This document shows, piece by piece, positions 56,241 through 62,705 of a DNA stretch of 64,000 bases. Location of the stretch: positions 1 to 64,000 of the IMG/VR virus record IMGVR_UViG_3300042473_001265, one strand, 5' to 3'. Position 1 is the first letter of the stretch; every line of letters starts with the position of its first letter. The notes below the pieces were generated by a model. The model did no database searches and was not told the origin of the DNA. It worked only from the letters and a program-made list of their open reading frames with translations. A program made the position numbers and the translations under genes.

Positions 56241-59200
56241 ATGAATATTCTTGAACTTGATTCCTACAATTTGGCCGACGCTGTTAAGTTTAACCAGCGT
56301 TTGAATCCGCGTCTGTGGGACAACAACGAACAGTTACGGCCCGAAGTGCATGATCATTTGCTGCAAATAGCTGATGATTTCCGCGAGTTTTTAGGAGTAA
56401 GCGGATACGATCTCAAAGATATAACCATCAGCGGATCCAATGCTGCGTACACATACACTCCCAATTCTGACATCGATCTACACCTGGTGGTTGATTTGCC
56501 CGAAGCTGACAACAGCGAAGTGTATCGCGAACTGTTTGATGCTAAAAAGTTTCAATACAACCAACAGCACAACATCACCATTGGCAGTCATCCTGTGGAA
56601 CTGTATGTACAAGATGCTAATAAAACACATGTGAGTCAAGGCATTTACAGTGTGTTGAACAATCAATGGATTGATGTGCCCAAGCGTAGAGATGCTGGAG
56701 TAGATGACATATCCACTCGCAGCAAATACGAAGATTTGGCTGCACGAATTGATAGTGCTGTTGCATCTGGTGATCATGATGACATGGCCAAATTGATGAG
56801 CAAAATCAAAGCCATGCGACAAGCCGGACTGAATCAGCATGGCGAGTTTGGTGCAGATAATCTAGCATTCAAAATGCTGCGCAACCAAGGCGCTATCAAA
56901 CGATTGATTGACGCTAGAAACGCTGCCAGAGACCGGGAGTTGAGCCTGCGTGAGCGTGAAATAGTTGTTAAACGACCATTCACATACGGATTCAAAACTG
57001 AAGATGTCAGCAGCAATCCCAGTGGTGTGAGCCCCGAAACAAAAATGTTCTTAAGCGAAAAGCCCGCAGCCAGTGTCGTTGACATTGTGTCATCGTTCAT
57101 TGATTACTGTGTGGAGCAGTTGGGCATTGAGCAACCGCCTCAAGTGAAGTTCAAGAAGGATCCGCAGTGGAGCGCTCGTAACAAAACTTTTGGCCGTTAC
57201 AATTCTGACCATAATCTATTGGAAGTGAGCCTAGCTGGACGCCATGTGATGGACATATTGCGCACAGTGGCACATGAACTCACCCACACCAGACAACACG
57301 AAATAGAAACAGTGCCAGACACTGCCGGCGCCACTGGTAGCCGATGGGAAAATCAAGCCAACGCCCAGGCCGGTGTGCTGATGCGTGACTATGCCGAACA
57401 GCATCCGGAGTTTTTCAACGATGACGGGTTAGAAGAAGGTATCCGGGACAAGTTAGCCACGGCTGCATTGGCAGCATGTGTTGCTGGTTCACCAGGCTGC
57501 GCCACAACCACTCCGATCAACACTGGCGCTGACGCTGTGAAGGCTGCTGTGCGAGCCAGCCAATTGACTCGTGCTGGGTTGGAACACGGAGCAAAACAAG
57601 AACTTAAGAATGTGCTGCGCCGTGGTGCAAATGCCAATGAAAGTTCTGGTTATATTCCAACAAAAAAACAAGCTAGAGATCCACGCTTTAGCATGGCTCT
57701 TACAAAAGATGTACAACCTGGTGCCACAGGTCGAGAAGCCAACAAATTAAACCTTCGCACAGACACGCAAGGCAAGCCGGCACTGTTGATGAAGACTGCC
57801 AACCTGCGTGAAGATCGCATGCAGCGGCAACGGACTGACCCCACATACAATGTGGCTGAAGATGACTTGTCCGAAGTTGATCGCCGGGCTGCGTTAAAAG
57901 CGTTGGGTGCAGGCGCAATGGCTGCTGCGGTACCGGGCGTGGCCAAAGCCGGACCTTTTGTGGATGTTGCTGCCCTAGGAAACACCAATCCTGACCAGTT
58001 CAACAAAGTATGGGTGCCCAGGTACAAAGAACTCACTACTCGATGCCAAGACATCCTGCGCCAATTGATTGCAGCAGCAGGCCCCAAATGGGCGCCGCTG
58101 TTGAAAGGCACTACCATTCGTGTAGTCTCAAGTGAAAATTATGCACAGGCCAGTGCAATTTCGCGCACCATCACTATTGATCTTTCGGTGTTCTGGGATG
58201 CTCCAGATGCGGCCTTGGCATTTACCATAGCACATGAGCTGGGACACATTGCCCTGGAACATGCCACTGGTACCGATGATGCGTCAGCGGACTACAAGAC
58301 TCAAGTACGAGTGGCTGCACAGTATCGGCAAGGCGAACTAGACGCAGACGAGTTCGCAGTGCGCCTGTGCAAGACACTGGGCTACAACAAGGCCGAAGTA
58401 TTCAAATTCATTGCCAAGAACGAAGCAGAATTGCAACTGTTGGATGTTCTGACACAGTCACCTACCAGCAGTCACCCCAGCCAAAAGACACGAATTGAAC
58501 GAGCCAGGATGAATGGGTTTCAGTTGAGCCGGGGCGGCATCGAACAGATGAATGTGTTGAAGCAACACCTGGCCGAAGATGACACTGAACACCGTGATAT
58601 AGTCAACCGCCTGAGTCGTGAACTGAAACTGTATGAAGATCAGGACCTGTTTGAAATCAACATGAGTCCCACAAATCTAAAGAAACTGGCAGCACAAACA
58701 GGCGCCATGGCTGGCATGGAATTTGAGATGATTGTGCCCGGTGCTGATGGCGGCGACGATGCTGCGGATATGGAACCCGACTACGACGCCGACGAAAATG
58801 TCATGAGCATCGAAGATGCAGCGCAGTTCTTTTTTGACGGTGACTTCAACGGTCGAAGAGACATTCAACGCCTGCGTGACAGCATGAGCGAAGATTATCA
58901 GACATGGCTAGGCGATGCATGGATGGAGTATTTTGAAACCTACAAAAACACCATTGTGTTTAGATACGGCAAAGAAAATTGGTCAGAGGCAGACATTGCT
59001 GAAATATTGGGCCTGGACGAAGCCGCAGCAGAAGCGTTGGAAAATCGTGGAGCAAGCCCTGAAGATTACATGGACGCTGCCGAAAAAGTCATTGAAGACG
59101 GTTTGGATCCCTGGCTGAATGATGCGCAGGAAGATGCACAAGAAGACTATTACAATGATGATCATGAAGAGGATTGGCTGAGAAGTGAAGGCATTCGCTC

Positions 59201-60584
59201 AATGAGCGATGTTTCGAGTCAGTACGATATTTCCTGGCCCTATTGGAGCACTCCTGGCAGCGAAGGCGCCAGCATTGAAGAAGTTGCTGATGAATTCCGT
59301 GAGGCCATTGGTCGCAAGGTAAACTGGTCTGCCAACTATCATGGTGGCCGCCGCGAACCCGATGCTTATGTGGTTGAGCCTGACGGCAGCCTGGAACCAG
59401 ATGACAGCAACGATTCTGGACTGGAGTTTGTGAGCCCGCCCTTGCCTGTTGACGACATGATTAGTGATCTAAACAAGGTCCGGGCCTGGGCCAAACAACG
59501 AGGCTGCTACACCAATGATTCAACCGGCCTGCACATCAATGTGAGTGTGCCGGGCTTTGACAACGACAAACTGGACTATGTTAAACTAGCTCTGCTGCTG
59601 GGTGACCAGTATGTGCTGGATCAATTTGGACGCACCGGCAACACCTATGCCAAAAGCGCCATGGGCATGATCAAAGAGCGAATCGCTCAGCGTCCCGAAG
59701 ATGCTGCTGCCATGTTGCAAAAAATGAAAACAGGCCTGGGCGAACTGGCCACCAAAGTTATACACAGCGGCACGACCAGCAAGTATACCAGTATCAATAC
59801 CAAGACTGGATACATTGAGTTTCGCAGTCCCGGCGGCGATTGGCTAAATGAAAACTTTGACAAGATTGAAACCACGCTGTTGAGATTTGTAGTGGCATTA
59901 GATGCTGCCATGGATCCGGCAAAGTATCGCGACGAATACCTGAAGAAGCTGTACACTGTACTCAAGCCTAAAGACCAAAATGATACCTTGAGTTATTTTG
60001 CTAAATTTGCTGCTGGTGAATTGCCCAAGGCTGCACTAAAGAGTTTTATCAAACAAGCACAACTGGAACGCAACAAGGTCAAAGATACCTATGCTGAACT
60101 CACGCCCGGACAAAGCAACTACAAGATCTATCAAATCTCTGATGGTAGAACAGTGGGCACATTCTATGCTGCTGATCAAGCACAGGCCAATGCTGAATTC
60201 ACTGACTGGTTGATGAGTCCCGAAGCTGGCGGCAGAGATGACTTTAGATACGCACCAATTGACACACCAATTCAAGGTCCTGTGGCCACAACACCTGTGC
60301 CCGGCGTCATTGACATTGAGCCAGATGTAGAACAGAACTTTGTTCCTGGTAGCACCCTGGATCTGCAACGCCAACGTCAACAAGCAGCACAGCAATCTGC
60401 CGCTAGTGGAACATTTAGAGGCACATGGGCAATCAAAGACAGCCAAGGCAATACACTACACACCTTCAGCGGCATTGGCAATTCACAAGCAGATGCCAAC
60501 AGAGTTGCAGCAGGATGGCTGGCTCGTGCAGGATACCAAGATGGTATCGAAGTTGCGGTTGTGCCAGTCATGGAGCCGTCGTGA
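56241..60584 (+). CDS. Multidomain polyprotein-like protein (1447 aa): Pol-beta-type nucleotidyltransferase, HExxH zincin, Tat-like signal plus M48-like peptidase, amidoligase
   Basis: SGSNA...SDIDLH; AHELTH; DRRAALK...AKA; AHELGH...ELDAD...SHP...RI; GMEFE...EPDGSL...GLEFVSPP...TGLHINVS...IEFRS. Confidence 0.8.
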   Translation: MNILELDSYNLADAVKFNQRLNPRLWDNNEQLRPEVHDHLLQIADDFREFLGVSGYDLKDITISGSNAAYTYTPNSDIDLHLVVDLPEADNSEVYRELFDAKKFQYNQQHNITIGSHPVELYVQDANKTHVSQGIYSVLNNQWIDVPKRRDAGVDDISTRSKYEDLAARIDSAVASGDHDDMAKLMSKIKAMRQAGLNQHGEFGADNLAFKMLRNQGAIKRLIDARNAARDRELSLREREIVVKRPFTYGFKTEDVSSNPSGVSPETKMFLSEKPAASVVDIVSSFIDYCVEQLGIEQPPQVKFKKDPQWSARNKTFGRYNSDHNLLEVSLAGRHVMDILRTVAHELTHTRQHEIETVPDTAGATGSRWENQANAQAGVLMRDYAEQHPEFFNDDGLEEGIRDKLATAALAACVAGSPGCATTTPINTGADAVKAAVRASQLTRAGLEHGAKQELKNVLRRGANANESSGYIPTKKQARDPRFSMALTKDVQPGATGREANKLNLRTDTQGKPALLMKTANLREDRMQRQRTDPTYNVAEDDLSEVDRRAALKALGAGAMAAAVPGVAKAGPFVDVAALGNTNPDQFNKVWVPRYKELTTRCQDILRQLIAAAGPKWAPLLKGTTIRVVSSENYAQASAISRTITIDLSVFWDAPDAALAFTIAHELGHIALEHATGTDDASADYKTQVRVAAQYRQGELDADEFAVRLCKTLGYNKAEVFKFIAKNEAELQLLDVLTQSPTSSHPSQKTRIERARMNGFQLSRGGIEQMNVLKQHLAEDDTEHRDIVNRLSRELKLYEDQDLFEINMSPTNLKKLAAQTGAMAGMEFEMIVPGADGGDDAADMEPDYDADENVMSIEDAAQFFFDGDFNGRRDIQRLRDSMSEDYQTWLGDAWMEYFETYKNTIVFRYGKENWSEADIAEILGLDEAAAEALENRGASPEDYMDAAEKVIEDGLDPWLNDAQEDAQEDYYNDDHEEDWLRSEGIRSMSDVSSQYDISWPYWSTPGSEGASIEEVADEFREAIGRKVNWSANYHGGRREPDAYVVEPDGSLEPDDSNDSGLEFVSPPLPVDDMISDLNKVRAWAKQRGCYTNDSTGLHINVSVPGFDNDKLDYVKLALLLGDQYVLDQFGRTGNTYAKSAMGMIKERIAQRPEDAAAMLQKMKTGLGELATKVIHSGTTSKYTSINTKTGYIEFRSPGGDWLNENFDKIETTLLRFVVALDAAMDPAKYRDEYLKKLYTVLKPKDQNDTLSYFAKFAAGELPKAALKSFIKQAQLERNKVKDTYAELTPGQSNYKIYQISDGRTVGTFYAADQAQANAEFTDWLMSPEAGGRDDFRYAPIDTPIQGPVATTPVPGVIDIEPDVEQNFVPGSTLDLQRQRQQAAQQSAASGTFRGTWAIKDSQGNTLHTFSGIGNSQADANRVAAGWLARAGYQDGIEVAVVPVMEPS

Positions 60585-61468
60585 GAGCACTAGAATTTTT
60601 ACACGAAGACGAACCAGCAAGAATCAAGATTGGTGGTGCTGAAGCAGCAGCCCGGGCACGAACCTGGATTGAAAAGGTGTATGCCCGTTATCCGCAAACC
60701 ATGCAGAACAATCATGTGATGACCTGGGGCTCGGGAGATGACCAACAGTTTGCAATGTTTGAATTAACTCCTAGCTTCAGCCGGCGTGGCGCAGTTGAAG
60801 TCAAATGGTTTCAAGCGTATCCGCTACGGTCTGGGGTGGGCAGTCGTGCTATGAAAGAACTGCAAGCCATGGCCCGAGAAGATGGAATCAGCCTTACATT
60901 ATTCCCCTGGGACAAAGGACAAGTAAGCCAAAGTAAACTGACCAAATTCTACCGAGGACAAGGCTTTTCTCCAACTGTCAAAGGTGGCAAAGCAATGCAA
61001 TGGAGCCCCGAGCTGGCGGAAGAACTCAGAGTTGATGTACCCAACGAAGAATGGCTTGACGATGCTATTGCGTATGCCAAGCAAAAAAGTCCCGACCGCA
61101 ACGGGTTGCCCTACATGGGCAAGACCACTGCTACTGTTAGACCTGAACCAATGGTATCCATGGATATACTCAAGCGACTACCGGGCATGCGAAACGAACA
61201 GCAAAATGTACGACAAGCGGATCTAGCAGCCATTATGAAAATAATGAAAGACACTGGCAAATTGCCACTGCATAGTTTTACTAATGAAGAATACAAGCCT
61301 TTTATCAATGTGGCCTACGATGGCAGTGCTTGGGTCAACGAAGGTAATCATCGTATCATGGCTGCTGCTGCCCTGGGTTGGAAAGAACTGCCTGTGCAAA
61401 TCAGTTACTTTGATGGCGGCGAACGAGTTGAATCTGGACCCATGTACCCAGGAAAGATTGGACTATGA
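60581..61468 (+). CDS. GNAT-like plus ParB-like two-domain protein
   Basis: GTG start after GGAG; R.GVGS.AM...L.KFY..QGF; NEGNHRIMAA..LG. Confidence 0.7.
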   Translation: MRALEFLHEDEPARIKIGGAEAAARARTWIEKVYARYPQTMQNNHVMTWGSGDDQQFAMFELTPSFSRRGAVEVKWFQAYPLRSGVGSRAMKELQAMAREDGISLTLFPWDKGQVSQSKLTKFYRGQGFSPTVKGGKAMQWSPELAEELRVDVPNEEWLDDAIAYAKQKSPDRNGLPYMGKTTATVRPEPMVSMDILKRLPGMRNEQQNVRQADLAAIMKIMKDTGKLPLHSFTNEEYKPFINVAYDGSAWVNEGNHRIMAAAALGWKELPVQISYFDGGERVESGPMYPGKIGL

Positions 61469-61923
61469 GAGCCAGTGAACTTTTAAACGAAGTAGTTGAT
61501 CTTGACACAGCATTTCCACTAAAGTGGGATCAGCAGTTTGCAGCTCAAGGTGAAATTCATGCGTCGGCCACAGATGCTGACGGCAGAGAAATTGGCATAT
61601 CGTTTACTCCTGCAGGCAATGGTGAAGTAACTGATGTAGCATTTACTCGCGGCGGAACACATGAAATGACTGGGCGTGGTGATGCAGGACGAGTAATGGC
61701 CACTGTGATCAACGCTATCAACACCTATGCAAAAAAATATAAACCACCGTATCTAGCGTTCAGTGCCAAGTCTGGTGGCGGCAGATCCAGTGCATACACC
61801 GCAATGATTCGGCGCCATGCACAGGGATATGAACTAGTGCCCACCGATAAATACCCAGCGGCCTTGAACAACTATCTTGAGTTCATTGGCAGCGATCAAC
61901 CATTTGTGCTGGCAAGAACATGA
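61465..61923 (+). CDS. Putative internal head protein
   Basis: N-terminus MRASELLNE. Confidence 0.6.
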   Translation: MRASELLNEVVDLDTAFPLKWDQQFAAQGEIHASATDADGREIGISFTPAGNGEVTDVAFTRGGTHEMTGRGDAGRVMATVINAINTYAKKYKPPYLAFSAKSGGGRSSAYTAMIRRHAQGYELVPTDKYPAALNNYLEFIGSDQPFVLART

Positions 61924-62705
61924 AAACAAAAGAATTTACCACAGAAGGCTGGAGCCAAAAATACAAAAAAAGTATCAATTGCAGTCATCCCAAGGGCTTT
62001 AGTCAGCGGGCCCATTGCGCTGGAAAGAAGAAGCAAAACGAAAGCGCAGAAATGGAAATGGTGTGTGAAATGTGTGGCCTGTGTGAAACACACGGCGATC
62101 ATTCACAGGACAACTTGGATGAAGCATGCTGGGACACACACAAACAAGTTGGTATGAAGAAAAAAAGCAACAAAATGGTTCCCAACTGTGTGCCTAAAAA
62201 CGAAGAAAAGGAGACCGCAATGACAGAAAATCAAGATGAATTGGCAAGAATACTGGAACTCAGCACAGGAGTAAGTGCAACAGATCGCGTGGAACTAAAC
62301 GAAGAGTTTGATCTAATAGAGTCTATCATTGACAGTCTTGCAGATCGCAATGGGGTAGATGCAGAGACAATATGGGAAGACCTCGACTCACTGACAGATG
62401 ATGAGTTGTATGTGTTTGCAGTGACTACGCCAATCATGGAAGATTGGCAAAAGGCCAACAAAAAGGATCGTACTGCCGGCATGAGTCAGAAAGCTGTCAA
62501 CGCTTATCGCAGAGAAAATCCCGGGTCCAAACTAAAGACTGCTGTAACTACCAAGCCCAGCAAATTAAAGAAAGGTTCGAAGGCGTCGAAACGTCGTAAG
62601 AGCTATTGCAGCCGCAGCCGTGGTCAAATGAAAATGCACAGCATCAGCTGTGCTAAAACTCCGGACAAGGCCATATGCAAAGCACGCCGTAGATGGAACT
62701 GCTGA
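61920..62705 (+). CDS. Putative internal head polyprotein of small Cys/Lys-rich modules
   Basis: MKTKEFTTE; basic modules separated by LDE, LNE and IME linkers. Confidence 0.65.
   Translation: MKTKEFTTEGWSQKYKKSINCSHPKGFSQRAHCAGKKKQNESAEMEMVCEMCGLCETHGDHSQDNLDEACWDTHKQVGMKKKSNKMVPNCVPKNEEKETAMTENQDELARILELSTGVSATDRVELNEEFDLIESIIDSLADRNGVDAETIWEDLDSLTDDELYVFAVTTPIMEDWQKANKKDRTAGMSQKAVNAYRRENPGSKLKTAVTTKPSKLKKGSKASKRRKSYCSRSRGQMKMHSISCAKTPDKAICKARRRWNC

What the first reader, a model, noticed from the sequence alone, without database searches (positions are those of the whole stretch)
57426..57645. Second hidden export/lipoprotein-like signal inside the same polyprotein
After the linker GLEE comes GIRDKLATAALAACVAGSPGCATTT: a basic n-region, a hydrophobic stretch and lipobox-like Cys residues (LAAC, SPGC). 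A short helical segment follows, ending at ANE. Two cryptic signals, each directly after a Glu linker, support the idea that released pieces are routed to the host envelope.
Basis: partly seen in the sequence, partly recalled or inferred. Interest (0 to 1): 0.6.

Follow-up and report, generated by a model that had tools for sequence, protein, structure and literature searches.

The report
Embedded lipoprotein signal in phage polyprotein
In the middle of a giant phage's 1,447-residue multi-enzyme protein sits a complete lipoprotein-type export signal followed by a short helical peptide. Relatives keep this unit under selection, which suggests the protein is cut after a glutamate and the freed piece goes to the host envelope, but no experiment has shown this.

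Summary
Bases 57426-57641 encode, inside ORF 56241-60584, the junction G-L-E-E, a basic n-region, a 12-residue Ala-rich core, two lipobox-like Cys (C413, C420) and a 47-residue basic helical peptide ending at E467.

It is not a chance linker:
- The unit is a separable module, present in some homologous jumbo-phage polyvalent proteins and exactly absent in others.
- A profile of it finds 135 clusters. 124 keep [LIVM]-x-E before the signal. 76 keep Cys, placed 19-25 residues after that Glu. 43 have an A-x-A signal-peptidase site instead.
- A few free-standing small proteins align column for column and use the same segment as a true N-terminal lipoprotein or Sec signal.
- The second signal in this protein is homologous to genuine N-terminal Tat signals of free-standing M48/Lit-like peptidases.

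The phage encodes a T4-type prohead protease, which in T4 cuts after L/I-x-E. Neighbouring genes start with T4-like capsid-targeting peptides.

Best reading: an embedded pre-lipoprotein unit that is released by cleavage after Glu and then exported by host machinery. Cleavage, packaging and export are inferred, not shown. In this phage the lipobox is non-canonical (Pro at -2).

The parts
56241..60584 (+). Polyvalent (multi-domain) protein gene, 1447 aa
   Evidence: ORF list and translation. Pfam and PHROG domains. 53 related viral loci share the architecture.
56241..56948 (+). N-terminal nucleotidyltransferase-like unit (aa 1-236). It is a free-standing gene in other phages.
   Evidence: phrog_36119 at E 1.5e-45. 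tblastn matches to stand-alone genes of Maribacter, Synechococcus and Lak phages. It ends at an L-R-E site (site list).
57069..57413 (+). Small zincin-like metallopeptidase fold (aa ~277-391). The HELTH motif lies at 57273-57287.
   Evidence: In the AF2 model on 33 homologues, this stretch has pLDDT above 90, and confidence collapses just before the junction. Weak fold matches to minigluzincins, IrrE and Wss1. Weak SprT-like Pfam match.
57426..57437 (+). Junction G-L-E-E (P4-P1). E399 is the proposed cleavage site, with G400 as P1'.
   Evidence: This Glu is invariant in alignment A1. [LIVM]-x-E followed by G/S/N/D/A occurs in 124 of 131 representatives, with P1' = G in 99 of 122. It fits the T4 gp21 motif L/I-x-E (PMC9026906).
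57438..57488 (+). Signal n-region (GIRDK) and Ala-rich h-region (aa 405-416), including C413 in an LAAC box
   Evidence: The h-region is uncharged in every family member that has one. It aligns with N-terminal signal peptides of P0178, P0187, P0181 and P0172.
57489..57500 (+). c-region and lipobox-like S-P-G-C. C420 is the likely lipidation and cleavage Cys.
   Evidence: C420 aligns with the lipobox Cys of the free-standing lipoprotein precursors P0178 (LPGC) and P0187 (MSGC). Across the family the last Cys sits 19-25 residues after the junction Glu and is followed by A-T in 64 of 76.
57498..57641 (+). 'Mature' basic helical peptide (aa 420-467), ending at E467
   Evidence: AF2 predicts one long helix at low confidence. 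The motif block is conserved in A1 and A3. Free-standing relatives end a few residues after the equivalent point. Those relatives match DUF4148 weakly, below cut-off.
57642..57875 (+). Next unit: the highly conserved 'SGYIPTKKQ' module (aa 468-545), ending in L-S-E
   Evidence: Present in all homologues, at 50-79% identity where the rest is 35-55%. No Pfam, NCBIfam or Atlas lead.
57876..57950 (+). Second embedded signal, Tat-like (aa 546-570): RR-x-x-L-K, an Ala/Gly core, then A-K-A
   Evidence: Aligns with the N-terminal Tat signals of free-standing homologues. P0014 passes TIGR01409 (22 bits against a cut-off of 16.7). The copy here scores 12.3, below cut-off.
57951..58577 (+). M48/Lit-like metallopeptidase unit (aa 571-779), with HELGH at 58233-58247. 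It ends at L-A-E.
   Evidence: PF01435 at E 5e-11. 56 free-standing proteins of about 225-245 aa end exactly at the equivalent of aa 778.
58578..60581 (+). Amidoligase_2 domain and C-terminal region (aa 780-1447)
   Evidence: PF12224 at aa 1009-1200. Conserved in nearly all homologues.

Best explanation
Bases 57426-57641 encode a complete pre-lipoprotein-like unit built into a jumbo-phage polyvalent protein. Its parts, in order, are a protease junction (L-E-E, then G), a basic n-region, an Ala-rich core, a lipobox-like Cys (C420, with a second box at C413) and a 47-residue basic helical peptide that ends at another Glu.

Proposed mechanism:
1. The polyprotein is cut after E399 and E467. The likely protease is the phage's T4-type prohead protease; the adjacent zincin domain is the alternative.
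2. The cut leaves G400 as a new N-terminus, so the buried segment becomes an ordinary N-terminal signal peptide.
3. Host Sec, Lgt and LspA export, lipidate and trim the piece. This leaves a small helical lipopeptide at the envelope. The residue at +2 is Ala, which in enterobacteria-like hosts means outer-membrane sorting.
4. The Tat-signal plus M48/Lit-like unit further down would be handled in the same way.

Shown here: the module's anatomy, its modularity, selection on its signal features, and its homology to real N-terminal signals.
Inferred: cleavage, the identity of the protease, any packaging in the capsid, export, lipidation, and the peptide's role. That role might be envelope modification or exclusion of other phages, by analogy with other small phage lipoproteins.
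For: 1. Modularity. Homologues either have the unit or join the zincin end directly to the SGYIP module. The closest relative, L004, keeps only the n-region. In AF2 the zincin fold ends before the junction and the signal lies outside it. The module alone gives two helices and no compact fold.
2. Selection. Among the 135 representatives at 50% identity, 131 have an uncharged core and 124 have [LIVM]-x-E before it. 76 are the Cys type, with a strict lipobox at the last Cys in 41, the Cys 19-25 residues after the Glu, and A-T following in 64. 43 are the A-x-A type.
3. Homology to real signals. The free-standing proteins P0178 and P0187 (lipoprotein type) and P0181 and P0172 (Sec type) align over both signal and helix. 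P0187's cluster lies in a phage-like contig.
4. The sister signal is homologous to N-terminal Tat signals that pass TIGR01409.
5. The same junction plus signal precedes cargo that acts in the envelope. GH19 lysozyme-like genes carry it, and one fusion has a GNAT domain, then the junction and signal, then GH19.
6. Protease context. The genome encodes a Peptidase_S77 prohead protease and a Gp23 capsid protein, plus a scaffold rich in [LIV]-x-E. T4 gp21 cuts after L/I-x-E (PMC9026906). Neighbouring genes begin with peptides resembling the T4 capsid-targeting sequence.
Against: - No experiment or proteome exists. No cultured phage carries the module.
- This copy fails a strict PROSITE-type lipobox rule (Pro at -2 of C420; C413 too close to the junction). 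SignalP and LipoP could not be run.
- The polyprotein itself has no capsid-targeting-like N-terminus, so packaging is unproven.
- The embedded Tat motif scores lower than the free-standing ones.
- Some lineages have lost the signal (L013) or the whole module (L004 and many others), so it is dispensable.
- [LIV]-x-E is a short motif that occurs 21 times in this protein.
- The phage encodes no LspA or SPase I of its own.
Confidence: 0.55

Rival explanations
1. Fossil of gene fusion. The unit was once a free-standing secreted or lipoprotein gene that fused into the polyprotein. The signal no longer drives export and persists only through recent ancestry or a generic structural role.
For: - Every unit of this protein exists as a free gene elsewhere.
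- The embedded Tat copy scores below the family cut-off while the free ones pass.
- L013 has a degraded signal and L004 has deleted it.
- Modules shuffle between positions, so some fusions may be young.
Against: - The embedded state is the norm. About 125 of 135 representatives are embedded, and only 3-4 start at a Met.
- It spans deep divergence (26-40% identity to this copy) with no charged residue in the core, a kept signal-peptidase site of either type, and a fixed distance from junction Glu to Cys. A functionless relic would not keep all of these.
Confidence: 0.2
2. Uncleaved membrane anchor. The Ala/Gly-rich helix acts as a signal-anchor, a SAR-like domain or a membrane-insertion helix. 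It would tether the polyprotein or its pieces to the inner membrane, for example during or after ejection, without signal-peptidase processing.
For: - The cores are weakly hydrophobic and rich in Gly and Ala, like SAR domains (my own knowledge). They occur on GH19 lysozyme-like proteins, a class where SAR endolysins are known.
- A long Gly/Ala-rich segment after V-N-E, G-W-K in another large protein of this genome has no obvious peptidase site.
Against: - An anchor does not need conserved lipobox Cys or A-x-A sites with Pro or Gly at -4 to -6.
- The two signals in this protein both carry their positive charges on the N-terminal side. That is incompatible with a two-pass membrane topology.
- The core here has only 12 residues before S-P-G-C.
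Confidence: 0.15
3. Co-translational internal signal, as in flavivirus polyproteins. The segment engages Sec as it emerges from the ribosome, and signal peptidase itself separates the upstream cytoplasmic enzymes from the downstream part, with no earlier cut after Glu.
For: Internal signals work this way in eukaryotic viral polyproteins (my own knowledge). The positive charges lie on the N-terminal side of the core.
Against: - Everything downstream, about 1,000 residues, would then be translocated. That includes an ATP-dependent amidoligase and a second signal with the same orientation.
- No stop-transfer segment follows.
- This reading leaves the conserved Glu junction unexplained.
Confidence: 0.05
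4. Chance low-complexity Ala-rich linker between domains.
For: Linkers in large phage proteins are often rich in Ala, Gly and Pro. Other such tracts exist in this genome.
Against: 4 of 5000 shuffles match it. The position-specific features are conserved in 131 representatives, and the segment is homologous to true signal peptides.
Confidence: 0.02

Closest known systems
Polyvalent proteins of phages and conjugative elements (Iyer et al. 2017, PMC5512222)
   Same: One polypeptide combines unrelated enzyme domains (nucleotidyltransferase, zincin-type peptidases, amidoligase). It is phage-encoded and has embedded metallopeptidase domains that were proposed to release the parts.
   Different: That paper contains no occurrence of 'signal peptide', 'transmembrane' or 'amidoligase'. 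Here complete export-signal-bearing units are embedded, each bounded by a conserved Glu junction.
T4 internal proteins: N-terminal capsid-targeting sequence removed by prohead protease gp21 after L/I-x-E (PMC9026906, PMC8442874)
   Same: The genome has S77 protease, scaffold and Gp23 genes. Neighbouring genes begin with peptides close to the T4 sequence MKTYQEFIAE, for example at 61465 and 61920, and at 234527 in the genome. The junction fits L/I-x-E.
   Different: - The polyprotein has no such N-terminus.
- The sites are internal.
- What the cut would expose is an export signal, which is not known for T4 internal proteins.
- Cleavage was not tested.
Bacterial lipoprotein (SPII) signal peptides
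   Same: The segment has the three-part layout and a Cys at position 21 from the proposed new N-terminus, followed by small residues. It is homologous to N-terminal lipoprotein signals of P0178 and P0187.
   Different: It is internal, not N-terminal. This copy has Pro at -2, so it fails the strict PROSITE-style rule. A second conserved Cys box lies 7-10 residues upstream.
DUF4148 (PF13663), small periplasmic proteins of proteobacteria
   Same: A small helical mature part sits behind a signal. The free-standing relatives P0178 and P0187 match at E 3e-4.
   Different: All matches fall below Pfam's cut-off (21 bits against 27). The copy in this window gives no match, and only 1 of 16 module sequences matches at E 0.015. 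This is a lead, not membership.
Internal signal peptides of eukaryotic viral polyproteins (flaviviruses, pestiviruses; my own knowledge)
   Same: A polyprotein whose internal hydrophobic signals direct parts of it across a membrane.
   Different: Those act co-translationally at the ER and are cut by signal peptidase alone. Here a prior cut after Glu seems to be required and export would be post-translational.

Membership tests
Bacterial lipoprotein signal peptide (PROSITE PS51257-type rule) | K or R within the first 7 residues | tested here: met
   If the N-terminus is G400, R402 and K404 qualify.
Bacterial lipoprotein signal peptide (PROSITE PS51257-type rule) | Lipobox pattern before a Cys placed at residues 15-35 | tested here: not met
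   C420 lies at position 21 but has Pro at -2. C413 has a good box (LAAC) but lies at position 14 with K404 inside the required uncharged stretch. Relatives L012, L014 and L054 pass. 41 of 76 family members have a strict box.
Bacterial lipoprotein signal peptide (PROSITE PS51257-type rule) | Located at the N-terminus of the translated protein | tested here: not met
   It starts at aa 400 of 1447. There is no in-frame Met or other conserved start in the n-region, and many relatives have W at P2'. It would need proteolytic release.
Bacterial lipoprotein signal peptide (PROSITE PS51257-type rule) | Lipidation by Lgt and cleavage by LspA | not testable with these tools
   Needs palmitate labelling or a globomycin test. 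SignalP and LipoP were not available.
Phage polyvalent protein (Iyer et al. 2017) | At least two domains of disparate biochemistry in one phage or plasmid polypeptide, usually with a peptidase domain | tested here: met
   Nucleotidyltransferase, zincin, M48/Lit-like peptidase and Amidoligase_2.
Phage polyvalent protein (Iyer et al. 2017) | Delivered into the host with the DNA | not testable with these tools
   No virion proteome exists. No cultured relative was found.
Substrate of a T4-type prohead protease | Cleavage motif L/I-x-E at the boundary | tested here: met
   L-E-E at aa 397-399. P3 is L, V, I or M in all 122 scored junctions. The E467 boundary is A-N-E, which fits the phiKZ-type S/A-x-E motif better than the T4 motif.
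Substrate of a T4-type prohead protease | Protease encoded by the phage | tested here: met
   Peptidase_S77 at G000:197443-197898, 84.9 bits.
Substrate of a T4-type prohead protease | Capsid-targeting peptide or another route into the prohead | tested here: not met
   The N-terminus belongs to the nucleotidyltransferase domain. Neighbouring genes, but not this one, carry the T4-like leader.
Tat signal peptide (sister element, aa 546-570) | Match to TIGR01409 or PF10518 above cut-off | tested here: not met
   12.3 bits against 16.7, and 13.2 against 22.7, for this copy. The free-standing homologue P0014 passes TIGR01409 with 22 bits.
DUF4148 (PF13663) | Score above Pfam's gathering threshold | tested here: not met
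   No match for this copy. The free-standing relatives score 21 bits against a cut-off of 27.

The most novel reading that the evidence does not exclude
Two-stage targeting. The polyprotein, and the many neighbouring proteins that carry a T4-like leader, are taken into the prohead. The prohead protease cuts them after Glu, which unmasks Sec, lipoprotein and Tat signals. After ejection into the next host, that host's own export machinery sends the pieces to the periplasm or membranes. The pieces include the helical lipopeptide, the M48/Lit-like peptidase and, in relatives, GH19 lysozyme. This would be the first case of phage-injected proteins routed to the envelope by unmasked signal peptides.
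Probability: 0.3. Interest if true: 0.85.

Novelty: new variant of a known kind. Interest (0 to 1): 0.7.

Why it matters
Polyvalent proteins are thought to act in the host cytoplasm in the first minutes of infection. If conserved, complete export signals are built into them, then some of their cargo is aimed at the envelope: a lipopeptide, a Lit/M48-like protease and, in relatives, a lysozyme. A short Glu junction would act as the switch that turns a silent internal segment into a working signal.

This gives a directly testable model for how large phage polyproteins are taken apart and sorted. It also defines a large, unannotated module family (at least 135 clusters) and suggests a simple sequence rule for finding envelope-directed phage effectors in metagenomes: [LIVM]-x-E, then G, a basic residue, an Ala/Gly core, and a Cys or A-x-A site.

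Tried and rejected
- Megablast of the gene against cultured phages found nothing. tblastn found only the nucleotidyltransferase and amidoligase parts, so no isolate or proteome is available.
- Pfam and NCBIfam on the 69-aa fragment and on the SGYIP module gave nothing usable.
- The word search with profile A1 found only two fragments of polyvalent proteins. The full HMMER search was therefore used.
- The PDB profile search with A1 gave only chance-level rows, with E at least 0.03.
- The Atlas look-up of the SGYIP module gave weak eukaryotic chromatin-domain look-alikes at low recognition. I rejected these.
- AF2 of the module alone had low confidence (pLDDT 52). I used it only to say that no compact fold is predicted.
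- The AF2 zincin model did not place the tail in the active site, so it says nothing on self-cleavage. Foldseek matches were weak, with E at least 5e-3.
- I looked for a phage-encoded LspA or SPase I and found none.
- Internal translation start: rejected. There is no conserved start codon in the n-region, and W is common at P2'.
- Literature searches found no description of embedded signals in phage polyproteins or of the MRAxEF leader.
I repeated the analysis from stored files; its last step crashed and was replaced.
- Read-mapping tools, complex prediction and alternative genetic codes were not used.
Full report
SETTING

The window is the first 64 kb of a 340,172-bp viral record that is about 98% complete. 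The phage has T4-type head genes:
- a Peptidase_S77 prohead protease at genome 197443-197898;
- a scaffold-like protein with 18 [LIV]-x-E sites in 366 residues, and a Gp23-family capsid protein.

The finding lies in ORF 56241-60584 (+), 1447 aa. The domains, in order, are:
- a nucleotidyltransferase unit (aa 1-236; phrog_36119 at E 1.5e-45), which is a free-standing gene in Maribacter, Synechococcus and Lak phages;
- a small zincin fold with HELTH at aa 345;
- the finding (aa 396-467);
- a very conserved 'SGYIPTKKQ' module (aa 468-545);
- a second signal-like segment (aa 546-570);
- an M48/Lit-like peptidase (aa 571-779);
- an Amidoligase_2 domain and a C-terminal region.

This is the architecture that Iyer et al. 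call a polyvalent protein (PMC5512222).

OBSERVATION

- G-L-E-E at aa 396-399;
- n-region GIRDK;
- a 12-residue uncharged Ala-rich core;
- Cys413 in an LAAC box and Cys420 in S-P-G-C;
- a basic peptide to E467, which AF2 draws as one long helix at low confidence.

Only 4 of 5000 shuffles of the protein give a comparable segment. By a strict PROSITE-style lipobox rule, applied to a fragment that starts at G400, this copy fails narrowly. C420 has Pro at -2, and C413 is one residue too early behind too short a core.

IT IS A SEPARABLE, CONSERVED MODULE

Fifty-three related viral loci encode homologues. The zincin always ends in [LIV]-x-E. After that Glu, some homologues continue directly into the SGYIP module and others carry the signal-plus-helix unit. 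The closest relative, L004, keeps only the n-region, and L013 keeps the helix but has lost the signal. The unit also occurs at other positions in other homologues, always behind the same junction.

In the AF2 model built on 33 homologues, the zincin fold has pLDDT above 90 and ends just before G-L-E-E. The signal segment lies outside it with pLDDT below 50. It is therefore not a buried core helix.

FAMILY-WIDE PATTERN

A profile of 16 modules (A1) was searched against 1.84 billion representatives and found 135 proteins with E at or below 1e-3. I re-aligned them locally:
- 131 have an uncharged core.
- 124 have [LIVM]-x-E followed by G/S/N/D/A just upstream. P3 is L 56, V 32, I 29, M 5. P1' is G in 99 of 122. 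P2' is I, W, V or L.
- 76 are the Cys type and 43 carry an A-x-A site instead.
- In the Cys type, the last Cys lies 19-25 residues after the junction Glu, which is a normal signal length.
- 41 of 76 have a strict [LVI][ASTVI][GAS]C box, and A-T follows in 64 of 76.

A switch between lipoprotein-type and signal-peptidase-I-type sites, with a fixed distance to the junction, is what real signal peptides do. An inert linker or a plain membrane anchor would not need either.

HOMOLOGY TO TRUE SIGNALS

A few family members are free-standing small proteins in which the same columns form an ordinary N-terminal signal:
- P0178 (71 aa) and P0187 (75 aa) are lipoprotein type. Their lipobox Cys aligns with C420, and P0178 also has Pro at -2.
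- P0181 and P0172 are Sec type.

P0187's cluster sits in a phage-like contig of small co-directional genes. Other members (P0154, P0162, P0175, P0182, P0188, P0190) have a 10-20-residue leader, then the junction, then the signal. The free-standing forms match DUF4148 weakly, below cut-off. I treat that as a lead only.

THE SISTER SIGNAL

A word search with aa 548-800 found 56 free-standing proteins of about 225-245 aa, at 45-54% identity. These proteins:
- begin with a leader of the type M-R-A-x-E-F-x-x-E, followed at once by a twin-arginine motif, an Ala-rich core and A-K-A;
- end exactly where this polyprotein has L-A-E at aa 777-779.

P0014 passes the TIGR01409 Tat model. The embedded copy here is weaker. 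P0014 lies in a phage contig. The polyprotein is therefore a chain of complete units that exist as separate genes elsewhere, signals included.

JUNCTION AND PROTEASE

T4 gp21 cuts after L/I-x-E, and the T4 internal proteins carry the leader MKTYQEFIAE (PMC9026906; PMC8442874). Many genes next to the polyvalent gene in related loci start with MRAQEF-type leaders. In this genome such leaders occur at 61465, 61920, 65051, 70783, 234156, 234527 and 282655.

This makes the prohead protease the most economical candidate. However, the polyprotein itself lacks such a leader, and the zincin directly upstream is an alternative, as Iyer et al. propose for such domains. The phage has no LspA or SPase I of its own, so host enzymes would be needed.

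CARGO LOGIC

The same junction plus signal precedes GH19 lysozyme-like domains in L014 and L048. In L027 it separates a GNAT domain, which depends on acetyl-CoA and so works in the cytoplasm, from a GH19 start, whose target is peptidoglycan. Two halves that must work in different compartments, split by this element, fit a cut-and-export mechanism.

MECHANISM AND RIVALS

Best reading (confidence 0.55): the protein is cut after E399 and E467; G400 becomes the N-terminus of a 20-residue signal; the host exports it and lipidates C420; a 47-residue helical lipopeptide ends up at the envelope.

Rivals:
- A fusion fossil (0.2). Embedding is the norm and the features are kept across deep divergence, which weakens this reading.
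- An uncleaved anchor or SAR-like helix (0.15). The conserved peptidase sites and the same-sense charges of both signals weaken it.
- A co-translational internal signal (0.05). It would drag the amidoligase across the membrane.
- Chance (0.02).

What the peptide does once exported is unknown. A role in modifying the envelope or excluding other phages is only an analogy.

NOVELTY AND LIMITS

The searchable literature holds no description of export signals embedded in phage polyvalent proteins or unmasked by a Glu-specific cut. All of the parts are known kinds; the combination appears to be new.

Everything beyond sequence anatomy, conservation and homology is inference. SignalP and LipoP, proteomics and export assays are the decisive tests.

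Noticed in passing
window 57642-57875 (aa 468-545): The 'SGYIPTKKQ...DPRF' module is the best-conserved stretch of the whole protein family, at 50-79% identity. It is always preceded by a Glu 1-3 residues upstream and always co-occurs with the amidoligase. It has no Pfam, NCBIfam, PDB or Atlas lead. It might be a docking or substrate peptide.
   Followed up: partly
window 61465-61923 and 61920-62705; genome 65051, 70783, 234156, 234527, 282655: Genes begin with M-R/K-x-x-E-F/L-x-x-E leaders close to the T4 capsid-targeting sequence. Related loci hold dozens of such genes with unrelated bodies, which suggests a large repertoire of capsid-packaged proteins.
   Followed up: partly
family-wide; here C413 (57477-57479) and C420 (57498-57500): 72 of 76 Cys-type modules have two Cys, 7, 8 or 10 residues apart. 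Each sits in a lipobox-like tetrad (first: VIAC, AAAC or LAAC). Why a second box inside the hydrophobic core is conserved is unexplained.
   Followed up: partly
L057 (genome 66000-71000), ORF from 66336, about aa 1120-1160: Another large protein of this phage (about 1466 aa, with a LysM-like stretch) carries I-E-E followed by a textbook twin-arginine motif, a Gly/Ala core and A-Q-A. L004 has the same.
   Followed up: no
L058 (genome 239500-244000), ORF from 239789, about aa 1108-1150: V-N-E then G-W-K is followed by a 32-residue Gly/Ala-rich uncharged stretch in a 1320-aa protein. It has the same junction but no clear peptidase site.
   Followed up: no
L027:11482-12366; L014:8729-9439; L048:9851-10510: GH19 lysozyme-like genes carry the leader, Glu junction and signal. 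In L027 a GNAT domain is fused upstream of the junction.
   Followed up: partly
genome 199167 onward (capsid protein, L060): The likely maturation site of the Gp23-like capsid protein (L-K-E then N-A-S, about aa 40-46) resembles the E-N/S-A-S junction in front of the SGYIP module in several homologues. The T4 cleavage position is recalled from memory and was not checked.
   Followed up: no
L042, L048, L016 and window 57840-57875: The motif T-D-P-T-Y-N-V-x-E recurs just upstream of embedded signals in several homologues and before the Tat-like signal here. It may be a second type of junction.
   Followed up: no
L061:5001-5744 (P0188): A 247-aa protein has a 15-residue leader, L-E-E then G-W-K, and an S-P-G-C signal like the one here. 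It lies between the tail sheath and gp19 tail-tube genes of a T4-like contig.
   Followed up: no
window 57389-57637 and 57489-57716, minus strand: Antisense ORFs of 82 and 75 aa overlap the finding. Protein-level conservation is on the plus frame, so I take them as spurious.
   Followed up: no
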